DNA of 64,000 nt from the IMG/VR virus record IMGVR_UViG_3300036770_007539, positions 124,001 through 188,000 of that record, one strand, 5' to 3'. A model generated the notes under the pieces. That model was not told the DNA's origin. It did no database searches and was given only the letters and a program-made list of their open reading frames with translations. The position numbers were made by a program, and so were the translations under genes. Shown in pieces: positions 4,722 to 19,574 of the stretch (its first letter is position 1; every line of letters begins with the position of its first letter).

Positions 4722-5369
4722 ATGGCTTTAAAACCTCTTAATCCAAAACATGAACCCTATGGCGTATTCGACGGACTTGATGCAGAAGTTACTGCTCTCA
4801 AAGGCGGCGAAGTTGTTGCTTTTACCTACGTCGCTAAAGGTAGCTCCGTAGACAAAGGCTCAGCCGATCTCAATGACGGCTACGTCTCTGATACCACTCA
4901 AACCCGTCCAGCAGTTACCAAAACTTTAGCATCTGGCGTTCGTCCCCTCTTCCTCGCTGATGAAGGCGTTTCCGGTTACGGTACACTCTTCGGCGTCGTC
5001 GTCGGCGGCACCTCAGGTCAACAAGTTTCAGGCTCTGCCCTCGGTCCTCACACCGCATACGCCTCTGGCAAAGTTACCCTCTGGGATGGTCCCGGTCTTT
5101 ATGCCGTTACCCTTGATGCAGTTGATACAACCGCAGCAACCGGCTTAACCAAAACCAACACCACCCTCGCTGGTAATGCAGCTCTCTACGCAACCTCAGC
5201 TGGTCTCTTAACCCCCAACTCCGCAGCTTCATTCGAAGTTGGTGGTCCAGTCGTCGGTCGCTTTATCGAATTTACCACCAATGGTTCATTCGTCACCACT
5301 CCATCAGATCTTGTAACCGGAGCAGTGAACTTCACTCAAGCAGTTCTCCGCTTCAAAGTAGAAGACTGA
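4722..5369 (+). CDS. Putative head decoration / capsid cement protein
   Basis: 215 aa, G/A/T/V-rich, immediately upstream of the MCP, with an AAGGA RBS and the same biased codon usage as the MCP. Confidence 0.65.
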   Translation: MALKPLNPKHEPYGVFDGLDAEVTALKGGEVVAFTYVAKGSSVDKGSADLNDGYVSDTTQTRPAVTKTLASGVRPLFLADEGVSGYGTLFGVVVGGTSGQQVSGSALGPHTAYASGKVTLWDGPGLYAVTLDAVDTTAATGLTKTNTTLAGNAALYATSAGLLTPNSAASFEVGGPVVGRFIEFTTNGSFVTTPSDLVTGAVNFTQAVLRFKVED

Positions 5370-5382
5370 TTTTGAAAAGATT

Positions 5383-5412
5383 TGAGGGGTGGCAGTCGCT
5401 GCCCCTCATTTG
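5383..5412 (+). terminator. GC-rich hairpin (weak terminator or processing stem) between decoration and MCP genes
   Basis: TGAGGGG...CCCCTCA inverted repeat followed by a short T run. Confidence 0.45.
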
Positions 5413-5475
5413 TCAAATAACAATAGAAATGCTTATCATTGTGATGAGCAGAATTAACTAAATAAGGATCCAATT

Positions 5476-8400
5476 ATGACTATGTTCAATTCAAAGGGCG
5501 AAGTTAACGCTTCTAGCGTTAAAGAAGCTCTCGAAGTTCTCTCAAAATATGCCTCAGTTGTTCAGAACGGTCTCCCCAGCAATTTCGCACTCGCTGGTCA
5601 ACCCGCTCTCTCCGATGAACGCCGTGACGAACTCGTTGCTCGCGCTATTTCCGACCAAAACGGCAAATTAGCTCTTGCACAAGCCATGGCTAACCCCATT
5701 AACCACTGATTTACGAGTGGGGTCTAAATTTGGCTATATGCTGGAAACTCTAAAAGCTTCAATACTTTGCACCCATACAAGCTAATCACCGTAGATAGCT
5801 TACCCATAGCAAAGTAAAAACTTGAAGATGACATAGACAATCAGCAGGAAAGATCGATAACATCGAAATCCCCAACGACTACATGCCAAACTCCTAAATA
5901 GGATGATGATATAGTCTGAACTTCATAGAAATATGAAGAGCTAAACAGAAATGATTTAGCCAGTCTCGGTAATCACTGTAACAAATGTCGTAAAAACTTA
6001 GATTACCAAGGTATCGCTCGTCGCGCCCTTGTAACCGATCCCTGAACATAGGTAGGGGATCTAAAATTTGGCTATATGCTGGGACAACTGAAAGCGAGAT
6101 TACTTGACTACACTATAGATTATGCACCGTAGCTAATCTTTTTAACCAAGTCAAGTTATAATATCAAGATGATACAGTTAATCAGCAGGAAAGATTTTAA
6201 TGATTGATAAAGATACTCTGTCCGAATTATACGTTAATAAAAATTTAACCTCCTACGAAATAGCTCAAATCTATCAAGTAGATAATTCCATCGTTCAAAA
6301 ACTTCTCATCGATCTCAATATCGATAAAAATCCTAAACAGCGTAAATATGAACTTATCAAAAAAGTTCCATTTACTCAGGAACAAAGAGATGCCATCGCT
6401 GGAATACTACTCGGTCAAAACCATGTCAAAAAACATGGAGACTCCTATAGATTAGAAGTTAAATATCCAGAATCAAAAAAAGAATTGACACTCTGGATTA
6501 AATCCATCTTAGGAAATTTTATTAACGTCATCCATAAAGAAGAAAAAAATAACTCGACTGTGCTTAGCCTTCAAACCGCTACCCATAACGAATTAAGCTT
6601 CTTCCACAAACTCTTTTATGAAAATAATAAAAAAGTAATTCGAACACAGCTAATCAATTATCTAACGCCTCTCTCTGTTGCTATATGGTTCTCTGATCAA
6701 GGAGAAATTAAAAATCATCTAACCATGAAATTTAATTCCAATAAGTTCTCCAAATCAGAACAAGAAACTCTTCAGTATATTCTAAAAGTTAAATTTAATG
6801 TTCGTACAAAAATTTGTACCTATCTTAAAAATAATATAGAATATCACTACCTCTCAGTTAATAAAGAAAATTCAGAAAAATTAACAGAGATAATTAAACC
6901 ATATGCAATATACTATCAATCTCTAAAATCCTCCTCAACGACTTTATGCCAAACATCTGAATCCAAAAATTTAGATGATGATAAAGTCTGATCTTCATAG
7001 GAACATGAAGAGCTAAGCAGAAATGACTTAGCTAGGGTAAATGCTCTATAACAATGCACCAATGTACCTCAAGGTGCTCTTCCCGTTTATCACCGTGATA
7101 TCGACGTAACCGCTGTTGTCGTTGCCAGCAACGGTTCACCTCCCGAATCACGTATCTTCGGCGAATCAGTCACAGTTCCTACTTTCGAACTTGCTTCAAA
7201 CCCCACCGTCCGTATCGCTGAAGTACGTCGTCGTCGCTTCAACGTTATCGACCGTGCAGTCCAAAAAGCTCGTCAAGAAATCATGGCTCAAGAAGACGCC
7301 AACGTCTTCGCAGCCCTTGATGCAGCTGCAAGCGTCGAAAACACCCTCCAAGACATTGCTGATACCGGTCTCCTCAAAGCCGACCTTCTCGAACTCAAAG
7401 CAGAAGTTGACAAATGGGACCTCGTAACCAGCAAATACTTCATGAACATCAAAGAATTCACCGATATCCTCAAATGGGCATCCGGTGGTGGTCAAGGAGC
7501 TGGTGGTGGTGAAATCGATCCCGTTAACTGTGTAGCGGCTTTAGCAGCGTGAGCAGCTAAAGAATAAAATTTGGCTATATGCTGGAAAATCTAGTAAGCA
7601 ATCTGTACTAAACATCCAAACAAACTTGGCACCGAGCCGGTTTAAAAAATAGTTTAGTAAAAATCAAATTGATATAGATGATCAGCAGGAAAAATCAATG
7701 AAAAAGATAGATATCCCAAAAGAAAAACTGATAGAATTATATTGTGAAAACAACCTCACAATGATTAAAATTGCAAAAATTTATAATGTAGACCGTACCA
7801 CGATCTCTAATAAATTAAAACAATTTCAAATTGATTCAAATCCAAATCAAAGAAAATATGAGAGCTTTAAAAATAAGCCCTTAACCAAAGAGCAAAAAGA
7901 TTTTATAGTCGGCTCTACTCTTGGAGATGCTTCAATTATACTTTCAGGTAGAAGAACAAGACCCTACTTTAAAGTATCTCACTGCGAGAAACAAAAAGAT
8001 TACCTAGTATGGAAAAAAGAAATTTTAGGCGATCTAGTAATAACAATTAGTAAAACTATAGATAAAAGAGGAAACTCTGTAATGTATGGTTTTAACACTG
8101 TCAGTCACGATGACCTAAGTTTTTTTAGAAAATTATTTTATATAGATAATAAAAAAATAATTAAAGATGAACTTAGCTCTCAATTATCTCCCCTGGGATT
8201 AGCTGTCTGGTTTATGGATGATGGTAGTAAATCAAATAAATGGAACTATAGATTTTCAACAGAAGGATTCTCCTACGAAGAAAATCTAAAACTAGCAAAT
8301 ATGTTAAAAATAAACTTTAATTTAAATGCTAAAGTTCTAGAATATACTAGAAGTAATAAAAAATATCACTACCTCTTCTTAAATAAAGAAAATGCAATCA

Positions 8401-8856
8401 ATATGACGAAAATAATTGAACCGTATATCGTTGATTGTATGAAATATAAACTAATTGATTGCTCCTCAACGACTACATGCCAAACTCCCGAAAAGGGATG
8501 ATGATATAGTCTGACCCATACAGGGATGTATGGAACTGAGCAGAAATGACTCAGTATGAATCAAAAAGATTCATTAACAATCTTGTACACAACGCGAAAT
8601 CCTCCAAACCGGTCTCTATGCTCGTATCTGGGGTGCAGACATCATGGTCAGCAAAATTGTTCCAGTTGGTACAGTTTACGCTTGCGCAGATCCGGAATTC
8701 GTTGGCGTCATGCCAGTAAGGCAAGACATCGAGGTATTACCCGCCGATGAGCCAAAGCGCCTCAGCCTCGGCTGGGTTGTTTCAGAAGAAATCGGCATCG
8801 GCATCCTCGTTCCACGCGGTGTTGCAGCTGGTCGCAAATCAGTAGCAGCAGGCTGA
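5476..8856 (+). CDS. Major capsid protein, spliced: join(5476..5699,5988..6043,7065..7524,8586..8856), 1011 nt = 336 aa
   Basis: Removing three group I introns restores one open frame: ...LAQAMANPI|RKNLDYQGIARRALVTDPL|PQGALPVYHRDID...GGEIDPV|TQREILQTGLYARIWGADIMVSK...SVAAG*. Size, position and highly biased codons fit an HK97-fold MCP. Confidence 0.9.
5700..5987 (+). ncRNA. Group I intron 1 of MCP (288 nt, no ORF)
   Basis: P1: exon ACCCCAU(5693-5699) pairs with GUGGGGU(5717-5723), with U.G at the splice site. P10: UUUACGA(5710-5716) pairs with 3' exon UCGUAAA. Terminal G5987. Core elements TTTGGC/GCCAAA (P3), AATCAGCAGG and GACTA/TAGTC (P7). Confidence 0.92.
6044..7064 (+). mobile_element. 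Group I intron 2 of MCP (1021 nt) carrying a LAGLIDADG-type ORF
   Basis: P1: exon GAUCCCU(6037-6043) pairs with GGGGAUC(6055-6061), with U.G. P10: AGGUA(6050-6054) pairs with 3' exon UACCU. Terminal G7064. Same core elements as intron 1. Confidence 0.92.
6200..6991 (+). CDS. Intron-encoded LAGLIDADG_2-like protein with N-terminal HTH; catalytic motifs eroded
   Basis: AIAGILLGQNH and AIWFSDQG align with the GxxLGD and WFMDDG motifs of the intron 3 ORF but lack the acidic catalytic residues. Confidence 0.8.
   Translation: MIDKDTLSELYVNKNLTSYEIAQIYQVDNSIVQKLLIDLNIDKNPKQRKYELIKKVPFTQEQRDAIAGILLGQNHVKKHGDSYRLEVKYPESKKELTLWIKSILGNFINVIHKEEKNNSTVLSLQTATHNELSFFHKLFYENNKKVIRTQLINYLTPLSVAIWFSDQGEIKNHLTMKFNSNKFSKSEQETLQYILKVKFNVRTKICTYLKNNIEYHYLSVNKENSEKLTEIIKPYAIYYQSLKSSSTTLCQTSESKNLDDDKV
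7525..8585 (+). mobile_element. Group I intron 3 of MCP (1061 nt) carrying a LAGLIDADG ORF
   Basis: P1: exon CCGU(7521-7524) pairs with GCGG(7535-7538), with U.G. P10: UGUGUA(7529-7534) pairs with 3' exon UACACA. Terminal G8585. Same core elements as introns 1 and 2. Confidence 0.92.
7698..8501 (+). CDS. Intron-encoded LAGLIDADG_2 homing endonuclease with N-terminal HTH
   Basis: FIVGSTLGDAS and LSPLGLAVWFMDDGS motifs; STEGFSYEE. Confidence 0.88.
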   Translation: MKKIDIPKEKLIELYCENNLTMIKIAKIYNVDRTTISNKLKQFQIDSNPNQRKYESFKNKPLTKEQKDFIVGSTLGDASIILSGRRTRPYFKVSHCEKQKDYLVWKKEILGDLVITISKTIDKRGNSVMYGFNTVSHDDLSFFRKLFYIDNKKIIKDELSSQLSPLGLAVWFMDDGSKSNKWNYRFSTEGFSYEENLKLANMLKINFNLNAKVLEYTRSNKKYHYLFLNKENAINMTKIIEPYIVDCMKYKLIDCSSTTTCQTPEKG

Positions 8857-8940
8857 TGAGCCGTAAATCGGCTGCTGATGAACCGTAATTTGGCACTAAC
8901 CTGCCGACGAACCTAAAATCACCTGCCGATGAACCGTAAA
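8849..8940 (+). repeat. Four degenerate direct repeats, consensus about CCTGCYGAYGARCC(G)TAAA; a fifth copy lies inside the MCP at 8739-8757
   Basis: GCYGAYGAR cores start at 8852, 8874, 8903 and 8925 (spacing 22, 29, 22 bp) and at 8743. Confidence 0.85.
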
Positions 8941-8969
8941 AGGGCGCTGGAGAAATCCGGCGTCCTTTT
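8938..8969. terminator. Bidirectional intrinsic terminator between the convergent MCP and methyltransferase genes
   Basis: AAAAGGGCGCTGGA-GAAA-TCCGGCGTCCTTTT hairpin flanked by A and T runs. Confidence 0.8.
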
Positions 8970-10981
8970 CATTTTTTGCGCATAACGATCACTGGTTCAT
9001 TTTTAGATTTTCCTTCCAATCCAGTATAACTTAGATACAATTCATGATCATAATTAAAATATCTAGAAGCTATTGTTAATAGATCTTGTTTGTACTTATC
9101 GGAAATATTAATAATAAAACGCCCATTAGGTTTTAGCATCTTTTCAATATTTTCACAGGTTTTAATCCAATATCCAAGATAGGCATCATAGGATCCTAGA
9201 TTGCATTGCGTAGCTTCTGAGGAATAGATTTCAGTATCGTAGTAGGGTGGGGAGCTAAAGGCTAAACAAACCTTTTGATGAAGATCTTCTTGGAAGAATA
9301 TTTCAGATCCGATATTGTGCAGGTTACATTTTTCTTGTTTAAAAATAGCTTTAGAAAGTTTAATTAAATTATTATAGGATTCTGTCCAAGGTTCTGTCCC
9401 TACATAAGTTAGATTTTTATTGGACGCCATAGCTCCAACTAATCTCTGACCGAAACCAGCGGAATAATCATAAACAATACCATCTTGTTCAGCATAGGTG
9501 TCGTAGATGAATTTAGCCACAGTAGTCATAAACATACTGGGAGAGCTAGAGGCTCTAGAGTTTTTAAATCCTTGTCTAAGCATTGCTCCAGAGATATTAA
9601 AAGTTTCTTTGTAAGAGATTCCAAGGCGATTATCTAAAACTTTTAATAATAGATCGTCTTTATGAAAAGCATCTATCATGGATATTTTTTTATCAAAAGA
9701 AACTTGATAAAAGTTTTCAAAAAAATGTTTAGTTAATTTGTTGCCGGTGTAGTTTTTAACTTTGATTAAAGTGCCTTCTAAAACTGTAGAGCTGTCAAAA
9801 TCTTTGATATCTTTCCATTCATTTAATAGTTCTAGGTCTGAAAATTTTGGGTAAGGAAATCCAAAGCCTCTAAAATAGGAGAAAAGGTAATTTTTAATTT
9901 CTTCTCTTTCTTTGAGGTTTAGGGAGGCGATATAATCTTTGGTTAATTTTTGATCATTGTAGGAGATGATATCTGTGGAACCATAGTTATAAGGAGCGTT
10001 TGTTTGATTTGATAATGGTGGTTCCAGAGATATTCTAGCTAAAGTTTCTAAATAGTTATTGTATTTTCTAGACATTTTAATGGTAGAATTATTATAGATC
10101 CAATCTCCCAATAATTTAAACTTTTTCACTCCATGAAACTCTAAATGCATAATATTCTTGCTATTTTCTCTATATTTAATTTTTTTGCTTTTGTATGGAA
10201 TAATGTTTAAATTCTTTTGAACGACTTCAGATATGGCACAAAGCAATTCATCGGTTCCAGTAATGGAAATTAGAGGGGTCTTATAGTTTAAGACCGACCC
10301 ATCCCCGTCAATTACACCTCTGATAAAATGTCTATCTAAGTCGGAATTTAATCCGATAGGATATTGATTGGTAAAAGTCTTATTGGGATGGCAACCAATT
10401 TCTCCAAGTCTTTGTTTTAATTTTTGAGAGCACATTCTAAAAGTAGCAATTTCTTTATTGTTTCCATCAGTATGGATCATGACCCGATCTTTTTTGTAAA
10501 AGAACATAGATAATTGTTTTAAAACATCTTGGTCTTTGGATAGTAAACGAATGCTAATGTCATTTCCATTTTTGGAGATATTGCCATCCGACCACATCAA
10601 ACCTAAGAAATAAGCTTTTTCTTCGCAATCAATTTGATCCAAGATAGATTCATCCAAAGGATAAATTCTTTTGGATTCCGAATCGCTGCGGGCTTCGATA
10701 TTATTTCTTTTCAGAATTCTAAGAATGGTAGTACTGTGAATATTTAATTCTTTGGCAAGAATTTCTGAAGAAACGCCATCTTGATATTTTTGGATAATAT
10801 ATTGAGTAGTTTCGCTGGAGACTCTTGGGGCGGCTTGAGTGCGTTCGATGCCTCTTTTCCTAAGGAGGCGGGTAACGGAATTATTGTAAACTCCTAATTT
10901 CTCTCCAATTTCTTTGGGAGAGACGCCTGCTTGATATAGGCTAATGACTTCTTGGATAGTTTCTTCGGGTAATTTTTTCAT
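8969..10981 (-). CDS. Fusion protein: two HTHs + LAGLIDADG endonuclease + amino-DNA methyltransferase (SPPY type)
   Basis: AYFLGLMWSDG and RHFIRGVIDGDG (LAGLIDADG); VYDYSAGFGQRL (SAM-binding motif I), VGTEP and AFSSPPYY (catalytic motif IV). The only long minus-strand gene in the window. Confidence 0.85.
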   Translation of the reverse strand: MKKLPEETIQEVISLYQAGVSPKEIGEKLGVYNNSVTRLLRKRGIERTQAAPRVSSETTQYIIQKYQDGVSSEILAKELNIHSTTILRILKRNNIEARSDSESKRIYPLDESILDQIDCEEKAYFLGLMWSDGNISKNGNDISIRLLSKDQDVLKQLSMFFYKKDRVMIHTDGNNKEIATFRMCSQKLKQRLGEIGCHPNKTFTNQYPIGLNSDLDRHFIRGVIDGDGSVLNYKTPLISITGTDELLCAISEVVQKNLNIIPYKSKKIKYRENSKNIMHLEFHGVKKFKLLGDWIYNNSTIKMSRKYNNYLETLARISLEPPLSNQTNAPYNYGSTDIISYNDQKLTKDYIASLNLKEREEIKNYLFSYFRGFGFPYPKFSDLELLNEWKDIKDFDSSTVLEGTLIKVKNYTGNKLTKHFFENFYQVSFDKKISMIDAFHKDDLLLKVLDNRLGISYKETFNISGAMLRQGFKNSRASSSPSMFMTTVAKFIYDTYAEQDGIVYDYSAGFGQRLVGAMASNKNLTYVGTEPWTESYNNLIKLSKAIFKQEKCNLHNIGSEIFFQEDLHQKVCLAFSSPPYYDTEIYSSEATQCNLGSYDAYLGYWIKTCENIEKMLKPNGRFIINISDKYKQDLLTIASRYFNYDHELYLSYTGLEGKSKNEPVIVMRKK

Positions 10982-16208: not shown

Positions 16209-16436
16209 ATGGAAAAACAATTCACAGGTAAAGTTATTTGGTTTAACCCTAAAAATGGCTATGGCTTTATTGAATGGTCAGATGATGGAGTAAAGCAAAA
16301 AGATATGTTCGTTCATTTTTCTGATATTGTTTGCGAGGGATTTAAAACCCTCACAAAAGATCAGCAAGTTACCTTTAAATTAGGAAAAAATCATAGCGGC
16401 AATCCAAAAGCCGTTGAAGTTACCGTTGCTAAATGA
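16209..16436 (+). CDS. Cold-shock domain protein (CspA family)
   Basis: TGKVIWFNPKNGYGFI, DMFVHFSDI, GFKTL; start chosen 8 nt after AGGA. Confidence 0.9.
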   Translation: MEKQFTGKVIWFNPKNGYGFIEWSDDGVKQKDMFVHFSDIVCEGFKTLTKDQQVTFKLGKNHSGNPKAVEVTVAK

Positions 16437-16834
16437 AATTTTTAATTCATAATCGTTCTAGAGTGGCGGTTTCAATAGGTGATTTGAGAATTACTATTCC
16501 ACCTGGAAAAACTATTGATTTATTAAAAAATAAAATTGGAATAACTTTAGAACAAATAGAAACTTCTTATAAATCAGGATCTATCTTTAAAAAAAAAGAT
16601 AAGTTATTTAAAGTAGAAGAACCACCAAATCCATTTAAATTATCAGAGATTCAAGTATCTAAAATAGCAGGAATGACAGATAATCCAATTGGATATTTTT
16701 CTAAAAACACATCTGTTTATAACGATGTCTTTGGCGAAGACGTTAATATCTCAGATGACGAATTTATTAAAAAATTAATAGAAGAAGAGCAAATGTTATG
16801 GAATCCTCATGAGAGGAAGAAAGAAAAGAAATAA
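16433..16834 (+). CDS. Hypothetical protein
   Basis: 133 aa, coupled to the Csp gene; resembles the N-terminus of ORF 11886. Confidence 0.6.
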   Translation: MKFLIHNRSRVAVSIGDLRITIPPGKTIDLLKNKIGITLEQIETSYKSGSIFKKKDKLFKVEEPPNPFKLSEIQVSKIAGMTDNPIGYFSKNTSVYNDVFGEDVNISDDEFIKKLIEEEQMLWNPHERKKEKK

Positions 16835-16871
16835 CATCTTGTTATGATTGCCAATATTTTTGTATATTTTT

Positions 16872-17777
16872 ATGGCAACTTTAAAACCCCGCTCTCAAAT
16901 TATCCATCCTACCGAAGGGGTAAGTCTACGTGCGCAATTTTATGATTTAAATGGCGATCCGGTAGATCTAGTATCCGTTCCTCAAGTTGCAATCATTCAG
17001 CCAAGCGGAAACGTAGCCGTAGGACCAACTACAGTTGGAGTCTATCGTGTAGATACTGGTTTATATGGATTTGATTATACAACGGCATTGCAGACCAGCC
17101 AAGGAGTTTGGGTGGATTTATGGCGAGGTCAAATTCCATCGGGTCAAACTATTGTTAAAGAATTTAATTTTACAGTATTTTATACTCAAACACCATTAGC
17201 GAATAGCGATGGTTACTGGGCTTTAGGAGATGATGTACCATTTAATTATTCTCAAACTGCAATATTAAATATTAATAAATTATTAAAGGGATTAAAAGCC
17301 AGATTAAAATCCAGTGGAAAATCAGCTGGAGTAGATCAATTTAATAATCCAATTTATGTAGATTGTGATATTTATAGTACAGATCAGTTAGTTACATTTT
17401 TAGCAGAATCATTGAGTATGTTTAATCAAATTCCTCATTTTACAGCTTTTGAATTTCATCATACAGAAATTATTACAATATTTTATGATATTTTAGTTCA
17501 GGGTGCAACATTATTAGCCCTATCTAGCCAGGCTTTGATTGAAAGAGGAAGAGAATATAATCTCACAGACAATGGTGTTAGCTTGACCCCTCCAACAATT
17601 AGCGAATTGCTTAATACGCAATGGAGCACGGAGCTAACAAATCACATGGAAAAGTTGAAGATGATTAAGGCGTCAATGAAGCCAATCGCGTTGGGTTTGG
17701 GTACGCTAACAGGAAGCGTTGCCCGCGCTCCACAATTCGCCCGTCTCCGTTGGCTCAGAGCCCGTCAAATCTACTGA
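16872..17777 (+). CDS. Putative neck / head-tail adaptor protein with N-terminal Ig-like domain
   Basis: ATG at 16872; beta-rich N-terminus (TGLYGFDY, GVWVDLW) and helical C-terminus with YNLTDNGVSL, an adaptor-like pattern; located between head and tail genes. Confidence 0.55.
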   Translation: MATLKPRSQIIHPTEGVSLRAQFYDLNGDPVDLVSVPQVAIIQPSGNVAVGPTTVGVYRVDTGLYGFDYTTALQTSQGVWVDLWRGQIPSGQTIVKEFNFTVFYTQTPLANSDGYWALGDDVPFNYSQTAILNINKLLKGLKARLKSSGKSAGVDQFNNPIYVDCDIYSTDQLVTFLAESLSMFNQIPHFTAFEFHHTEIITIFYDILVQGATLLALSSQALIERGREYNLTDNGVSLTPPTISELLNTQWSTELTNHMEKLKMIKASMKPIALGLGTLTGSVARAPQFARLRWLRARQIY

Positions 17778-17791
17778 TAAAAGGAAAAGAA

Positions 17792-18751
17792 ATGCGATAT
17801 CAAGTCTATGCGCATATTAATAAGACCACAGGAAAAGTCTATGTAGGAATCACCAGCAAAGACATGATGAAAAGATGGCATCGTCATGTAGTAGAATCTG
17901 GAAAAAACAATCCTAAAAATGCATGTTACTTTCATCGTGCTATTCAAAAATACGGAAAAGATGACTGGTATCATATAGCGCTAGAGACGATAGAGTGCGA
18001 AAACATTAAAGAAGCTGAAGAATGCGAAATTAAATGGATTAAAATATACGAATCTAATAATCGCTTGTACGGTTACAATAGTACCTCTGGTGGAAAAATC
18101 AATGAATTCACACCAGAAGTTAGAGAAAGAATGTCTAAAAAAACAAAAGAAAGCTTAACGCCAGAGCGGCTAGAATTGCAATCTATAAAAATGAAAGAAT
18201 ATTATAAATATAATTCAAATCCATTTGAAGGTAAGCGGCATACTGACGAATCTAAAATAAAAATGTCAGAAAAAGTTAAAAAATATTATGAAAATAATCC
18301 AAATCCATTTAAAAACAAAGAGCATACCGATGAAACTAAAGCTTTAATGTCAAAAAAATTTAAAGAAAGACTATCTAAAGATAATTTTATATCTAATTTT
18401 AAATTAATGACGACTGAACAAAGACAAAAAGGAATAGAAGCATCAATCAATACTAGAAAAAACATGCACTTAAGCAAGTTCGATTTCAATGAAGTTCAAG
18501 AGCTTGCAAAGCAATGCTACACCAATGTTGAACTTGCTAAATTGCTAGGATGTACTAATTCTCATATTTCATATTTGAAAAAAAGAATAAAATTAGAATT
18601 TAAACAAAAAGAAATTAATTTAAATAAAATCCTAGAAGTAATATTAAAAGAGGCATCTTCTGTTAAAACAATAAAAGATCTTTGTAATAAGCTGAATATT
18701 TCAGAATATATTTTGCATAATATTTTAAAAAAAAAAATAATAAATCAATAA
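17792..18751 (+). CDS. Free-standing GIY-YIG homing endonuclease with NUMOD3 repeats
   Basis: QVYAHIN..TGKVYVGIT, RWHRH, FHRAIQKYG, E..WI and GYNST; NPFEGKRHTDESKIKMS repeated twice. Confidence 0.88.
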   Translation: MRYQVYAHINKTTGKVYVGITSKDMMKRWHRHVVESGKNNPKNACYFHRAIQKYGKDDWYHIALETIECENIKEAEECEIKWIKIYESNNRLYGYNSTSGGKINEFTPEVRERMSKKTKESLTPERLELQSIKMKEYYKYNSNPFEGKRHTDESKIKMSEKVKKYYENNPNPFKNKEHTDETKALMSKKFKERLSKDNFISNFKLMTTEQRQKGIEASINTRKNMHLSKFDFNEVQELAKQCYTNVELAKLLGCTNSHISYLKKRIKLEFKQKEINLNKILEVILKEASSVKTIKDLCNKLNISEYILHNILKKKIINQ

Positions 18752-18782: not shown

Positions 18783-19574
18783 ATGAGTATAGAAAAAGAT
18801 TTAGAAGTATTAAACGAAGTTAAAAAAAGAATAAAAAAATCAAAAACTGTCCAAAACATGTTCAAAGAATCAGATGTATCTTTGGATATTATTGATTTAG
18901 TACCCATGTGTTTTGGAGACTTAGAGGTTTCGGCACGAACACAGCATGGAATCATTGTTTTTAATAAAAAATTAAAAGAAAAACCCGAAGAAATTGATCA
19001 TTACATGGTTCATGAATTAACTCATATTTTGCAACAATGCTTCTCGGATGGACCTACTCAAGGCTCTAACAATGAAGATTATTTAGATAATCCCTATGAA
19101 CAAGAAGGATTTCAAAAACAAACAAAATTCTTATCTGAGACTGATGGCGATCATGCGGCAGAACATTACATAAATCAAGTCTTAGATCATCACGAAGTTC
19201 CAAAAAGCGAAAGAAAAGAAAAGAAAGATGAATTATTAACTTTGGCATCTTCCGAATCAAGAAGAAGCAGATTACTCGAACATCTCGAAGAACAACTTCC
19301 ATCTTCGTCAAGTGTTGGGGAAATGGTTCCTTCAAGAGATGCATTGAGAATTACCTCGGATATGCTAGAAAGAATGACCAAAGATCCTGATTATAGAGAA
19401 AGAGTTAAAGTTCTTATAAAAGAAGATGAGCGACAGAGGTTAATAGAAAATCCAGAAGAAATGAGACGTTTAGAAGAAGAGCAAGAGAGATATGAAAATC
19501 AAATAAAAACTAATAGAGAGGGAGCTGCAGGTCTCCAAAAATTCTTGGACACATTACCAAAGCCACTTAAATAA
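18783..19574 (+). CDS. Putative zinc metallopeptidase (HExxH)
   Basis: YMVHELTHILQ with a downstream YLDNPYEQEGF containing the likely third ligand Glu. Confidence 0.65.
   Translation: MSIEKDLEVLNEVKKRIKKSKTVQNMFKESDVSLDIIDLVPMCFGDLEVSARTQHGIIVFNKKLKEKPEEIDHYMVHELTHILQQCFSDGPTQGSNNEDYLDNPYEQEGFQKQTKFLSETDGDHAAEHYINQVLDHHEVPKSERKEKKDELLTLASSESRRSRLLEHLEEQLPSSSSVGEMVPSRDALRITSDMLERMTKDPDYRERVKVLIKEDERQRLIENPEEMRRLEEEQERYENQIKTNREGAAGLQKFLDTLPKPLK

What the first reader, a model, noticed from the sequence alone, without database searches (positions are those of the whole stretch)
5476..8856. Major capsid gene split by three related group I introns
Seen: three introns with U.G P1 helices, P10 helices and terminal G; their removal gives a continuous 336-aa frame, including a 56-nt middle exon. 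Each unspliced junction hits a stop soon after (5707, 6043, 7550). All three share near-identical core blocks (TTTGGCTATATGCTGG, AATCAGCAGGAAA, CAACGACT..ATGCCAAA, GAT.ATAGTCTGA, CAGAAATGA). Established: phage group I introns are best known in nucleotide-metabolism, polymerase, terminase and lysin genes. Inference: three splicing events gating the most abundant virion protein is unusual and could be regulatory. Standard gene callers will miss this MCP.
Basis: partly seen in the sequence, partly recalled or inferred. Interest (0 to 1): 0.82.

Follow-up and report, generated by a model that had tools for sequence, protein, structure and literature searches.

The report
Capsid gene split by three introns
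The major capsid gene of an uncultured giant phage is broken by three related, mobile self-splicing (group I) introns. Environmental RNA holds the gene with its four pieces joined exactly at the predicted points. This is a well-supported new example of something already reported in other phages.

Summary
Exons 5476-5699, 5988-6043, 7065-7524 and 8586-8856 join into a 1011-nt, 336-aa frame. It is 52% identical, with no gap at any junction, to Bacillus phage G gp27, a capsid protein with a solved structure (PDB 6WKK). About 64 intron-less homologues also align across all three junctions.

Intron 1 scores 75 bits on Rfam's group I model. Introns 2 and 3 share its core (61-69% identity, with compensatory base-pair changes). 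Both carry LAGLIDADG genes in the P6 loop.

One metatranscriptome contig holds all four exons joined exactly as predicted. A near-identical DNA haplotype in another sample keeps introns 1 and 2.

The introns come and go among near-identical alleles, across at least six insertion sites. One relative has a 12-nt micro-exon between two introns.

Capsid-gene introns are already published (mycobacteriophage LittleE, crAss-like phages), so this is a new member of a known kind.

One new lead: the intron 2 protein has lost both metal-binding Asp residues, yet evolves under strong purifying selection (dN/dS about 0.15). It may be a maturase.

The parts
5410..5439 (+). Promoter-like site (TTGTCA, 18-nt spacer, TATCAT) upstream of the capsid gene. 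A small hairpin at 5391-5403 precedes it.
   Evidence: Consensus scan only, 10 of 12 matches. The RNA contigs begin to match at 5375. Function not shown.
5476..5699 (+). Capsid gene exon 1 (224 nt, aa 1-75). It ends in T. CCCCAT at 5694-5699 is the 5' strand of P1.
   Evidence: phrog_2522 major head protein, profile positions 9-67. Residues 45-75 align to phage G gp27 residues 4-34.
5700..5987 (+). Intron 1, at insertion site B. Group I ribozyme of 288 nt with no ORF. Guide sequence: P10 at 5710-5716 and P1 at 5717-5722. The last base is G at 5987.
   Evidence: Rfam RF00028, 75.3 bits, E 2.6e-17. The minimum-energy fold reproduces P1, P3-P6, P8 and P9, z = -4.9. Skipped exactly in RNA contig X15.
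5988..6043 (+). Capsid gene exon 2 (56 nt).
   Evidence: X15 contig piece 5988-6043. Aligns to the conserved RKNLDYQG..DP stretch of gp27.
6044..7064 (+). Intron 2, at insertion site C. Group I intron of 1021 nt with an ORF in the P6 loop.
   Evidence: The ORF-less core is 69% identical to intron 1, with compensatory changes in P7, P8, P9 and P9.1. The 3' half scores 22 bits on RF00028. Joint 6043/7065 is seen in RNA runs X15 and X19.
6200..6991 (+). Intron 2 ORF: 263 aa, HTH plus LAGLIDADG_2. Both metal-binding Asp residues are replaced (LLGQN and SDQGE). The ribosome-binding site AGGAAA lies in P4'/P6. The last ~25 codons overlap the stretch from P6' to P7'.
   Evidence: Pfam PF03161, E 2.6e-26. 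Alignments. A clade of nine proteins at 78-99% identity keeps intact ORFs without these Asp residues. dN/dS is 0.14-0.19.
7065..7524 (+). Capsid gene exon 3 (460 nt).
   Evidence: phrog_2522, profile positions 88-226, E 3e-29. PDB 6WKK residues 54-191, E 8.5e-35.
7525..8585 (+). Intron 3, at insertion site D. Group I intron of 1061 nt with a P2 hairpin (7539-7562, GTGA loop) and an ORF in the P6 loop.
   Evidence: The core is 61-65% identical to introns 1 and 2. Joint 7524/8586 is seen in RNA runs X15 and X16. The same joined form also exists as DNA (X4, L003-L006), and X4 holds a variant without the ORF.
7698..8501 (+). Intron 3 ORF: 267 aa, HTH plus LAGLIDADG_2, with both canonical acidic residues (LGDAS and DDGS). 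Presumed active homing endonuclease.
   Evidence: Pfam PF03161, E 1.6e-33. 41% identical to the intron 2 ORF. Alignment.
8586..8856 (+). Capsid gene exon 4 (271 nt, including the TGA stop).
   Evidence: phrog_2522, profile positions 234-317, E 6.5e-23. PDB 6WKK residues 198-273, E 1.2e-29.
8938..8979 (+). Terminator-like hairpin (14 pairs) followed by a run of T, ending the capsid transcription unit.
   Evidence: The same stretch gives a weak, below-threshold hit to an sRNA terminator model.

Best explanation
The region is the major capsid protein gene (HK97-type, phage G gp27 family) of an uncultured jumbo phage. The identical contig in IMG/VR is 301 kb.

Three paralogous group I introns interrupt the gene, each inserted in a locally invariant stretch of the protein. 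After transcription, each ribozyme folds. P1 pairs the last exon bases with the internal guide sequence, with a U.G wobble at the cut. An external guanosine attacks the 5' splice site. P10 then aligns the next exon, and the freed exon end attacks after the terminal G. This ligates the exons into one 336-codon mRNA. The stop codons just inside each intron would release ribosomes before they run into the ribozyme core.

The introns are mobile selfish elements.
- Intron 3 carries an apparently intact LAGLIDADG homing endonuclease. It is still polymorphic in natural populations.
- Intron 2 carries a LAGLIDADG protein that has lost both catalytic residues but is kept by selection.
- Intron 1 has no ORF. 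It probably spreads by co-conversion with its neighbour, which lies only 56 nt away.

Shown here: exon structure, capsid protein identity, the ribozyme fold (model score and covariation), the joined form in RNA, and the DNA polymorphism. Inferred: self-splicing chemistry, endonuclease activity, homing, co-conversion and the role of the in-frame stops.
For: - Frame restoration and the T...G rule at each intron.
- Rfam group I hit on intron 1: 75 bits, E 2.6e-17.
- Core similarity of 61-69% and shared exact blocks found only in this gene.
- Covariation in 13 distinct family members: compensatory changes in P1, P5a, P5b, P8, P9, P9.1 and P9.2, and a few in P3 and P7. P4 is invariant.
- Fold z-score of -4.9 for intron 1.
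- Capsid identity:
  - The exon pieces hit phrog_2522 in order along the profile.
  - Exons 3 and 4 hit PDB 6WKK.
  - The spliced protein is 52% identical to gp27 with no gap at any junction.
  - About 64 of 80 related loci encode an uninterrupted homologue that aligns over residues 1-336.
- RNA:
  - The 1412-nt contig of metatranscriptome X15 lies on 5375-5699, 5988-6043, 7065-7524 and 8586-8832 without a break.
  - X16 and X19 show the same joints.
  - RNA depth over the introns is 0, against 10-18 over the exons.
  - DNA run X4 has the same SNP haplotype, but running continuously through introns 1 and 2.
- Mobility: introns are present or absent at sites A, B, C and D among 97-100% identical alleles, and further sites occur in diverged alleles. 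All the intron ORFs checked are HTH plus LAGLIDADG_2.
Against: - The RNA and DNA runs come from different samples. A never-sampled, fully intron-free near-identical strain could in principle have produced the RNA contigs.
- For junction 3, an intron-less DNA allele with exactly the same joined sequence does exist (L005). That junction alone therefore proves nothing.
- Contigs cannot show splicing efficiency or rare unspliced RNA.
- Introns 2 and 3 do not reach Rfam's threshold on their own, because of the ~800-nt ORF in P6.
- P1 of intron 3 has only 4 pairs.
Confidence: 0.9

Rival explanations
1. The introns are real, but the joined RNA contigs come from intron-free strains. Splicing of this allele would then be unproven, and the window's copy could be a disabled gene.
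For: - RNA and DNA were not taken from the same sample.
- An intron-3-less DNA allele with the identical junction exists (L005; X4 joint).
- Contigs show presence, not absence.
Against: - None of the near-identical DNA alleles seen lacks the site C intron, or lacks both A and B. These are the window, L001-L006, L082, L083 and X4.
- Three independent metatranscriptomes nevertheless show site C joined.
- The RNA haplotype matches the X4 DNA haplotype that carries introns 1 and 2.
- The exons are fully conserved in frame, and the ribozyme cores keep their pairing through compensatory changes. A dead gene would not be expected to do either.
Confidence: 0.06
2. Splicing acts as a regulatory gate on capsid production. 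One version: intron 2 needs its own catalytically dead LAGLIDADG protein as a maturase, so capsid mRNA matures only after that protein has been made.
For: - The intron 2 ORF lacks both metal-binding Asp residues. The same is true across a clade with up to 22% aa divergence, and the ORFs stay intact.
- dN/dS is 0.14-0.19 at dS 0.5-0.9.
- The ribosome-binding site lies inside P4'/P6.
- LAGLIDADG maturases are known in fungal mitochondria and in one bacterium (PMC3984707, PMC3943268).
Against: - Intron content differs among near-identical alleles. L005 has an ORF-less intron at site C, and L006 has one with a canonical DG/DDG endonuclease there. Capsid expression therefore needs no particular intron or protein.
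- No RNA-binding or splicing data exist.
- Selection on the protein could reflect some other function, such as DNA binding.
Confidence: 0.2
3. The insertions are not spliced at the RNA level. Instead they would be free-standing endonuclease genes that split the capsid gene into separately translated pieces (as reported for Aeh1 NrdA), or inteins.
For: Split genes with unspliced endonuclease insertions are known in phages (described in PMC7344957).
Against: - Intron 1 has no ORF at all, yet is a full ribozyme.
- The frames are broken by stops and frame shifts, which excludes inteins.
- A 56-nt exon cannot make a stand-alone subunit.
- RNA contigs carry precise joints.
Confidence: 0.02

Closest known systems
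Capsid-gene intron of mycobacteriophage LittleE (Cluster J; Pope et al. 2013, PMC3706429)
   Same: A probable group I intron (U at the exon end, G at the intron end) inside the major capsid subunit gene. It carries a LAGLIDADG-like ORF. Splicing was shown at the RNA level. A related ORF-less copy sits in another structural gene.
   Different: One 819-bp intron, with the ORF on the opposite strand, in a temperate siphovirus of about 110 kb. Here there are three paralogous introns in one capsid gene of a jumbo phage, with same-strand ORFs in P6 and multiple insertion sites across the population.
Intron-rich capsid genes of crAss-like phages, Delta and Zeta groups (Yutin et al. 2021, PMC7886860)
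   Same: A capsid ORF split into several fragments (five in OLRF01000054). Three of the intervening segments encode group I intron-type proteins. They were found in metagenome assemblies and confound annotation.
   Different: A different phage order and capsid family. Those insertions were identified through protein domains, without the ribozyme structure, junction-level RNA evidence or allele polymorphism shown here.
Staphylococcus phage Twort orf142 with three group I introns (Landthaler and Shub 1999, cited in PMC6669764; details from memory, paper not held)
   Same: One late phage gene interrupted by three related self-splicing group I introns. Exon skipping between related introns was reported.
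   Different: Twort introns are subgroup IA2, with P7.1/P7.2 (from memory). The introns here have only 3 nt between P7 and P3', so they lack that element. No exon-skipped joints were seen here, although contigs would miss rare forms.
Jug jumbo gut phages (PMC12880540)
   Same: Jumbo phages whose essential genes are often split by group I introns. Splicing was validated by metatranscriptome reads mapping across junctions.
   Different: The genes named as split there are terL, nrdD and DNA polymerase, and most introns are about 206 nt. In this 64-kb window the intron family occurs only in the capsid gene.
LAGLIDADG maturases: I-AniI, the yeast bI3/bI4 proteins and the Thermotoga neapolitana 23S intron protein (reviewed in PMC3943268 and PMC3984707)
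   Same: Intron-encoded LAGLIDADG proteins kept for a function other than, or besides, DNA cleavage. The intron 2 ORF has that signature: catalytic residues lost and strong purifying selection.
   Different: No RNA-binding or splicing test was done here. I found no phage LAGLIDADG maturase in the literature I searched.

Membership tests
Group I catalytic intron (Rfam RF00028) | Covariance-model score above the curated gathering threshold (50 bits) | tested here: met
   Intron 1 scores 75.3 bits over the full-length model. Introns 2 and 3 do not reach it on their own (22 bits for the 3' half of intron 2, no hit for intron 3), because about 800 nt of ORF sits in P6. They are assigned by homology to intron 1.
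Group I catalytic intron (Rfam RF00028) | U at the last exon position, paired with G in P1; a terminal G on the intron; P10 pairing with the 3' exon | tested here: met
   All three introns meet this. U.G is found in 12 of 13 distinct family members; the exception is an alignment error.
Group I catalytic intron (Rfam RF00028) | Conserved P3-P9 core supported by compensatory base changes | tested here: met
   My own pair count on a MAFFT alignment of 13 cores found 37 of 66 listed pairs with both-side changes. The P5 and P6 rows of that table (7 pairs) were mis-mapped by my script and are disregarded. P3 and P7 are nearly invariant and P4 is invariant, so they are uninformative.
Group I catalytic intron (Rfam RF00028) | Precise excision from RNA | tested here: met
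   Exact joints are seen in metatranscriptome contigs from three runs. Caveat: the DNA and RNA are not sample-matched, and junction 3 also exists as DNA.
Group I catalytic intron (Rfam RF00028) | Guanosine-dependent self-splicing in vitro | not testable with these tools
   Needs a bench assay.
LAGLIDADG homing endonuclease (Pfam PF03161, two-motif single chain) | Domain match above the Pfam cut-off | tested here: met
   Intron 2 ORF: 93 bits. Intron 3 ORF: 116.5 bits. The cut-off is 25 bits.
LAGLIDADG homing endonuclease (Pfam PF03161, two-motif single chain) | An acidic (D/E) metal-binding residue at the end of each LAGLIDADG helix (PMC6294521) | tested here: not met
   Not met for the intron 2 ORF, which has Q in both motifs (LLGQN, SDQGE). 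Met for the intron 3 ORF (LGDAS, DDGS) and for all 11 other intron ORFs aligned. The intron 2 protein is therefore a family member by fold, but should not be filed as an active endonuclease.
LAGLIDADG homing endonuclease (Pfam PF03161, two-motif single chain) | Site-specific cleavage of the intron-less allele, and homing | not testable with these tools
   There is only indirect support, from presence/absence polymorphism at identical sites.
HK97-fold major capsid protein, phage G gp27 family | Significant full-length similarity to a capsid protein with a solved structure | tested here: met
   Exon 3 against 6WKK: E 8.5e-35. Exon 4: E 1.2e-29. The spliced protein is 52% identical over 283 columns. 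An intron-less homologue gives E 3e-95. No structure was predicted here.

The most novel reading that the evidence does not exclude
The intron 2 LAGLIDADG protein has lost both catalytic Asp residues but is conserved under strong purifying selection in a whole clade. It may be a phage-encoded group I intron maturase, or a cleavage-dead DNA binder used against co-infecting intron-less phages. If it is a maturase, making the most abundant virion protein would depend on a protein encoded inside its own intron.
Probability: 0.25. Interest if true: 0.65.

Novelty: new member of a known kind. Interest (0 to 1): 0.5.

Why it matters
- **Annotation.** This capsid family is widespread: 295 relatives in IMG/VR, with contigs up to 470 kb. 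In 16 of the 80 best relatives, the intron-bearing alleles are called only as small anonymous ORFs. The marker gene used for classification and phylogeny is therefore missed.
- **A natural population series for the homing cycle.** The locus offers near-identical alleles carrying different intron sets at at least six sites within one gene. These include introns without an ORF, with a live endonuclease and with a dead one. There is also a 12-nt micro-exon between two ribozymes.
- **The dead LAGLIDADG clade.** It is a concrete candidate for testing how homing endonucleases take on new functions in phages.

None of this overturns current understanding. Group I introns in phage capsid genes, and intron-rich jumbo phages, are already documented.

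Tried and rejected
- **DNA search of the region against GenBank phages.** It found only 40-47-nt matches (94-96%) to Staphylococcus epidermidis phage introns over P8-P9, and no close relative.
- **Rfam at a permissive threshold on the region and on the whole window.** Intron 3 was not detected and intron 2 only weakly. There is no further group I intron in the window. The other hits (BjrC68-like, cspA-like) are below threshold and were treated as chance or as the terminator.
- **Search for the family's core blocks elsewhere in the window.** Only isolated 13-mer matches with 2 mismatches turned up, so there are no further copies.
- **Pfam on the exon pieces.** No hit. PHROGs and PDB were needed to identify the protein.
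- **Exon 1 alone against PDB.** No hit, because the N-terminal 44 aa are not shared with gp27.
- **Upstream ORF 4722-5369 against the phage G decoration protein gp26.** No similarity. Its function was left open.
- **PHROGs and Pfam on ten neighbouring ORFs.** Almost all are unknown.
- **tRNA scan.** None found.
- **Subgroup of the introns (IA, IB, ...).** Not assigned, because no subgroup models are available here. I note only that there is no room for P7.1/P7.2.
- **A covariance model of my own.** Not built, because only three ORF-less copies can be given by reference and it would add little.
- **The Twort paper (PMC22036).** Not held.
- **My pair-count script.** It mis-mapped P5 and P6, so those rows are disregarded.
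Full report
**What is in the sequence**

The four stretches 5476-5699, 5988-6043, 7065-7524 and 8586-8856 join into 1011 nt. That is a 336-aa frame plus a stop codon, with no internal stop. Each upstream exon ends in T and each intervening stretch ends in G.

The guide sequences can be read directly.
- Intron 1: CCCCAT pairs with GTGGGG, with a U.G wobble at the cut. The adjacent TTTACGA pairs with the first seven bases of exon 2 (P10).
- Intron 2: GATCCCT pairs with GGGGATC, and AGGTA pairs with TACCT.
- Intron 3: CCGT pairs with GCGG, which is only 4 bp. TGTGTA pairs with TACACA. A P2 hairpin with a GTGA loop follows.

Read through without splicing, the frames stop at 5707-5709, 6043-6045 (T|GA across the junction) and 7550-7552.

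The exons are 48-54% G+C. The introns are 30-38% and the whole window is 34%.

**The intervening stretches are group I introns of one family**

- Rfam's group I model matches intron 1 end to end at 75.3 bits (threshold 50, E 2.6e-17).
- The minimum-energy fold of intron 1 reproduces P1, P3, P4, P5 with a long P5a-c arm, P6, P8 and P9. Its z-score is -4.9 against shuffled sequences.
- Introns 2 and 3 fall below the Rfam threshold because each holds about 800 nt of ORF in the P6 loop.
- With the ORFs cut out, their cores are 61-69% identical to intron 1 and to each other.
- I added ten further distinct members from related phage contigs. Base-pair counting on that alignment shows both-side compensatory changes in P1, P5a, P5b, P8, P9, P9.1 and P9.2, and a few in P3 and P7. 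P4 is invariant.
- Only 3 nt separate P7 from P3'. The introns therefore lack the P7.1/P7.2 element of subgroup IA, to which the T4 and Twort introns belong (from my own knowledge). I did not assign a subgroup.

**The host gene is the major capsid protein**

- The exon pieces hit PHROG 2522, "major head protein", in order along the profile: positions 9-67, 88-226 and 234-317 of 318.
- Exons 3 and 4 hit the solved structure of Bacillus phage G gp27 (PDB 6WKK) at E 8.5e-35 and 1.2e-29.
- The spliced protein aligns with gp27 at 52% identity over 283 columns, with no gap at any junction.
- Each junction lies in a locally invariant stretch: AQAMANPIR, DPLPQGA and DPVTQ.
- In phage G the gene is uninterrupted.
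- In IMG/VR, 295 stretches encode relatives, on contigs of up to 470 kb.
- Among the best 80, about 64 encode an uninterrupted protein that aligns over residues 1-336 at 74-81% identity.

**RNA evidence**

The window comes from subsurface metagenomes. Close relatives occur in many freshwater DNA and RNA data sets. I laid three metatranscriptomes and one DNA run on 5300-9000.

- In RNA run X15, one 1412-nt contig lies on 5375-5699, 5988-6043, 7065-7524 and 8586-8832 with nothing between the pieces. All three predicted joints are exact.
- X16 shows 7524/8586. It also shows exon 1 to exon 3 with a diverged 56-nt exon 2 between them.
- X19 shows 6043/7065.
- RNA depth is 10-18 over the exons and 0 over all three introns.
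- In DNA run X4, contigs with the same SNP haplotype as the RNA run continuously from exon 1 into intron 1. They also run from intron 1 through exon 2 and intron 2 into exon 3.

Two caveats apply.
- The RNA and DNA come from different samples.
- For site D, an intron-less DNA allele exists (X4 joint 7524 to 8590; L003-L006). L005 has exactly the joined sequence. Junction 3 in RNA is therefore not proof by itself.

For sites B and C, no near-identical DNA allele lacks the site C intron, and none is free of an intron at both A and B. Splicing is the parsimonious reading.

**The introns are mobile and dispensable**

Among alleles whose capsid protein is 97-100% identical, intron content varies:
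- the window and L002 have sites B, C and D;
- L004 has B and C;
- L005 has A, B and C;
- L006 has A and C.

In L005, introns A and B are separated by a 12-nt micro-exon, GGCAAATCCCAT.

More diverged alleles carry family members at these positions:
- 2 nt upstream of site B (L014);
- 4 nt downstream of site B (L030, L044);
- site A (L041);
- site C (L029, L064, L072).

In all, 16 of the 80 loci carry at least one intron.

X4 holds intron 3 in three states: with its ORF, without its ORF (7692 to 8463) and absent.

The exon sequences at sites B', C and D resemble each other (ATCCGT| or GATCC(C)GT|, then TAC at C and D). This would suit spread to new sites through similar P1 pairing or relaxed endonuclease specificity. 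That last point is inference.

The whole pattern matches the homing cycle of invasion, fixation, decay of the endonuclease and loss. It argues against any single intron being a required regulator.

**The intron proteins**

- All the intron ORFs checked are HTH plus LAGLIDADG_2. The window's two are 41% identical.
- Both start just after AGGAAA, which is part of P4'/P6.
- Both run about 70 nt into the 3' core. Their shared C-terminus (SSTTxCQT...DDDxV) and their stop codon (the TGA of GTCTGA) are dictated by the ribozyme.
- The intron 3 protein keeps the two metal-binding acidic residues that define active enzymes (PMC6294521).
- The intron 2 protein has Gln at both positions.
- Nine database clusters, 78-99% identical to it, also lack an acidic residue there (Q, R or H in motif 1; Q or L in motif 2). 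Their ORFs are nevertheless intact.
- Three of them were recovered with their DNA. Two sit in the same capsid-gene architecture.
- Pairwise dN/dS over 230 codons outside the ribozyme overlap is 0.14-0.19, at dS 0.5-0.9.

The protein is therefore selected for something other than cleavage. A maturase role is the obvious candidate. It is known for fungal mitochondrial LAGLIDADG proteins and for one bacterial intron (PMC3943268, PMC3984707). It is untested here. Alleles with an ORF-less or endonuclease-bearing intron at the same site show that the site does not intrinsically need this protein.

**Comparison with what is known**

- A capsid-gene intron with a LAGLIDADG-like ORF, spliced in RNA, was shown in mycobacteriophage LittleE (PMC3706429).
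- Capsid genes split into up to five fragments by group I-type insertions were described in crAss-like phages (PMC7886860).
- Jumbo gut phages average 18.5 group I introns per genome, validated with metatranscriptomes (PMC12880540).
- Twort orf142 has three related introns (cited in PMC6669764).

The present case is a new member of this kind, in the phage G-like jumbo lineage. It has unusually complete evidence and some attractive details: paralogous introns, six or more sites, the micro-exon and the dead LAGLIDADG clade.

The rarity claim is overstated, and the regulatory idea has no support beyond the maturase lead.

**Context**

- A promoter-like site at 5410-5439 and a strong terminator at 8938-8969 bracket the gene.
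- Gene callers on related contigs report the capsid gene only as 70-, 89- and 70-aa fragments with no domain hit.

Noticed in passing
window 8969-10981 (minus strand): A 670-aa ORF that fuses HTH domains, a LAGLIDADG_3 domain and an N6/N4 DNA methylase domain. It is the only minus-strand gene in this structural block and sits directly downstream of the capsid gene. It is syntenic in related contig L082 (704 aa). Possibly a free-standing homing endonuclease fused to a methyltransferase.
   Followed up: partly
window 17750-18751: A GIY-YIG plus NUMOD3 homing-endonuclease gene in a 25.6% G+C stretch. It lies between ORF 16848-17777 (weak head-tail connector hit) and ORF 18783-19574. I did not check whether it lies in an intron or splits a gene. 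Rfam finds no ribozyme there.
   Followed up: partly
window 8852-8948: The capsid 3' untranslated region holds two 46-nt direct repeats (74% alike), built from units like CTGCYGATGAACCGTAA. DNA run X4 has a variant that replaces 8857-8967. Function unknown.
   Followed up: partly
L005:1995-3452: Two group I introns of the same family (265 nt without an ORF; 1181 nt with a LAGLIDADG ORF) are separated by a 12-nt micro-exon, GGCAAATCCCAT. A third intron lies 56 nt further on. That makes three ribozymes within 82 nt of coding sequence.
   Followed up: yes
L044:3183-5133: A single 1951-nt intron at a site 4 nt downstream of site B carries two LAGLIDADG_2 ORFs. One is in the P6 loop and one lies between P7 and P7'. 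Possibly a nested insertion.
   Followed up: partly
window 5893-5939: The P8-P9 part of intron 1 is 94-96% identical over 40-47 nt to sequences in Staphylococcus epidermidis, S. hominis and S. haemolyticus phages (PH15, phiIPLA5, StB12 and others). In some of them the match lies within cell-wall hydrolase genes. This suggests a shared intron lineage across very different phages.
   Followed up: no
window 5476-8856 against the whole window: The capsid exons are 48-54% G+C, in a genome region of 34%. The upstream ORF 4722-5369 is also G+C-rich. This probably reflects codon bias in highly expressed late genes.
   Followed up: no
L003:716 and L004:3224; DNA run X4, joint 7524 to 8590: Several alleles without intron 3 read GTCACC at the insertion site, instead of the GTTACA of intron-bearing alleles. 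Both encode the same amino acids. L005 is intron-less with GTTACA. The synonymous variant could be a cleavage-resistant homing site.
   Followed up: partly
window 16299-16377: A below-threshold match (32 bits; gathering score 78) to part of the cspA thermoregulator model, upstream of ORF 16433-16834. Probably chance.
   Followed up: no
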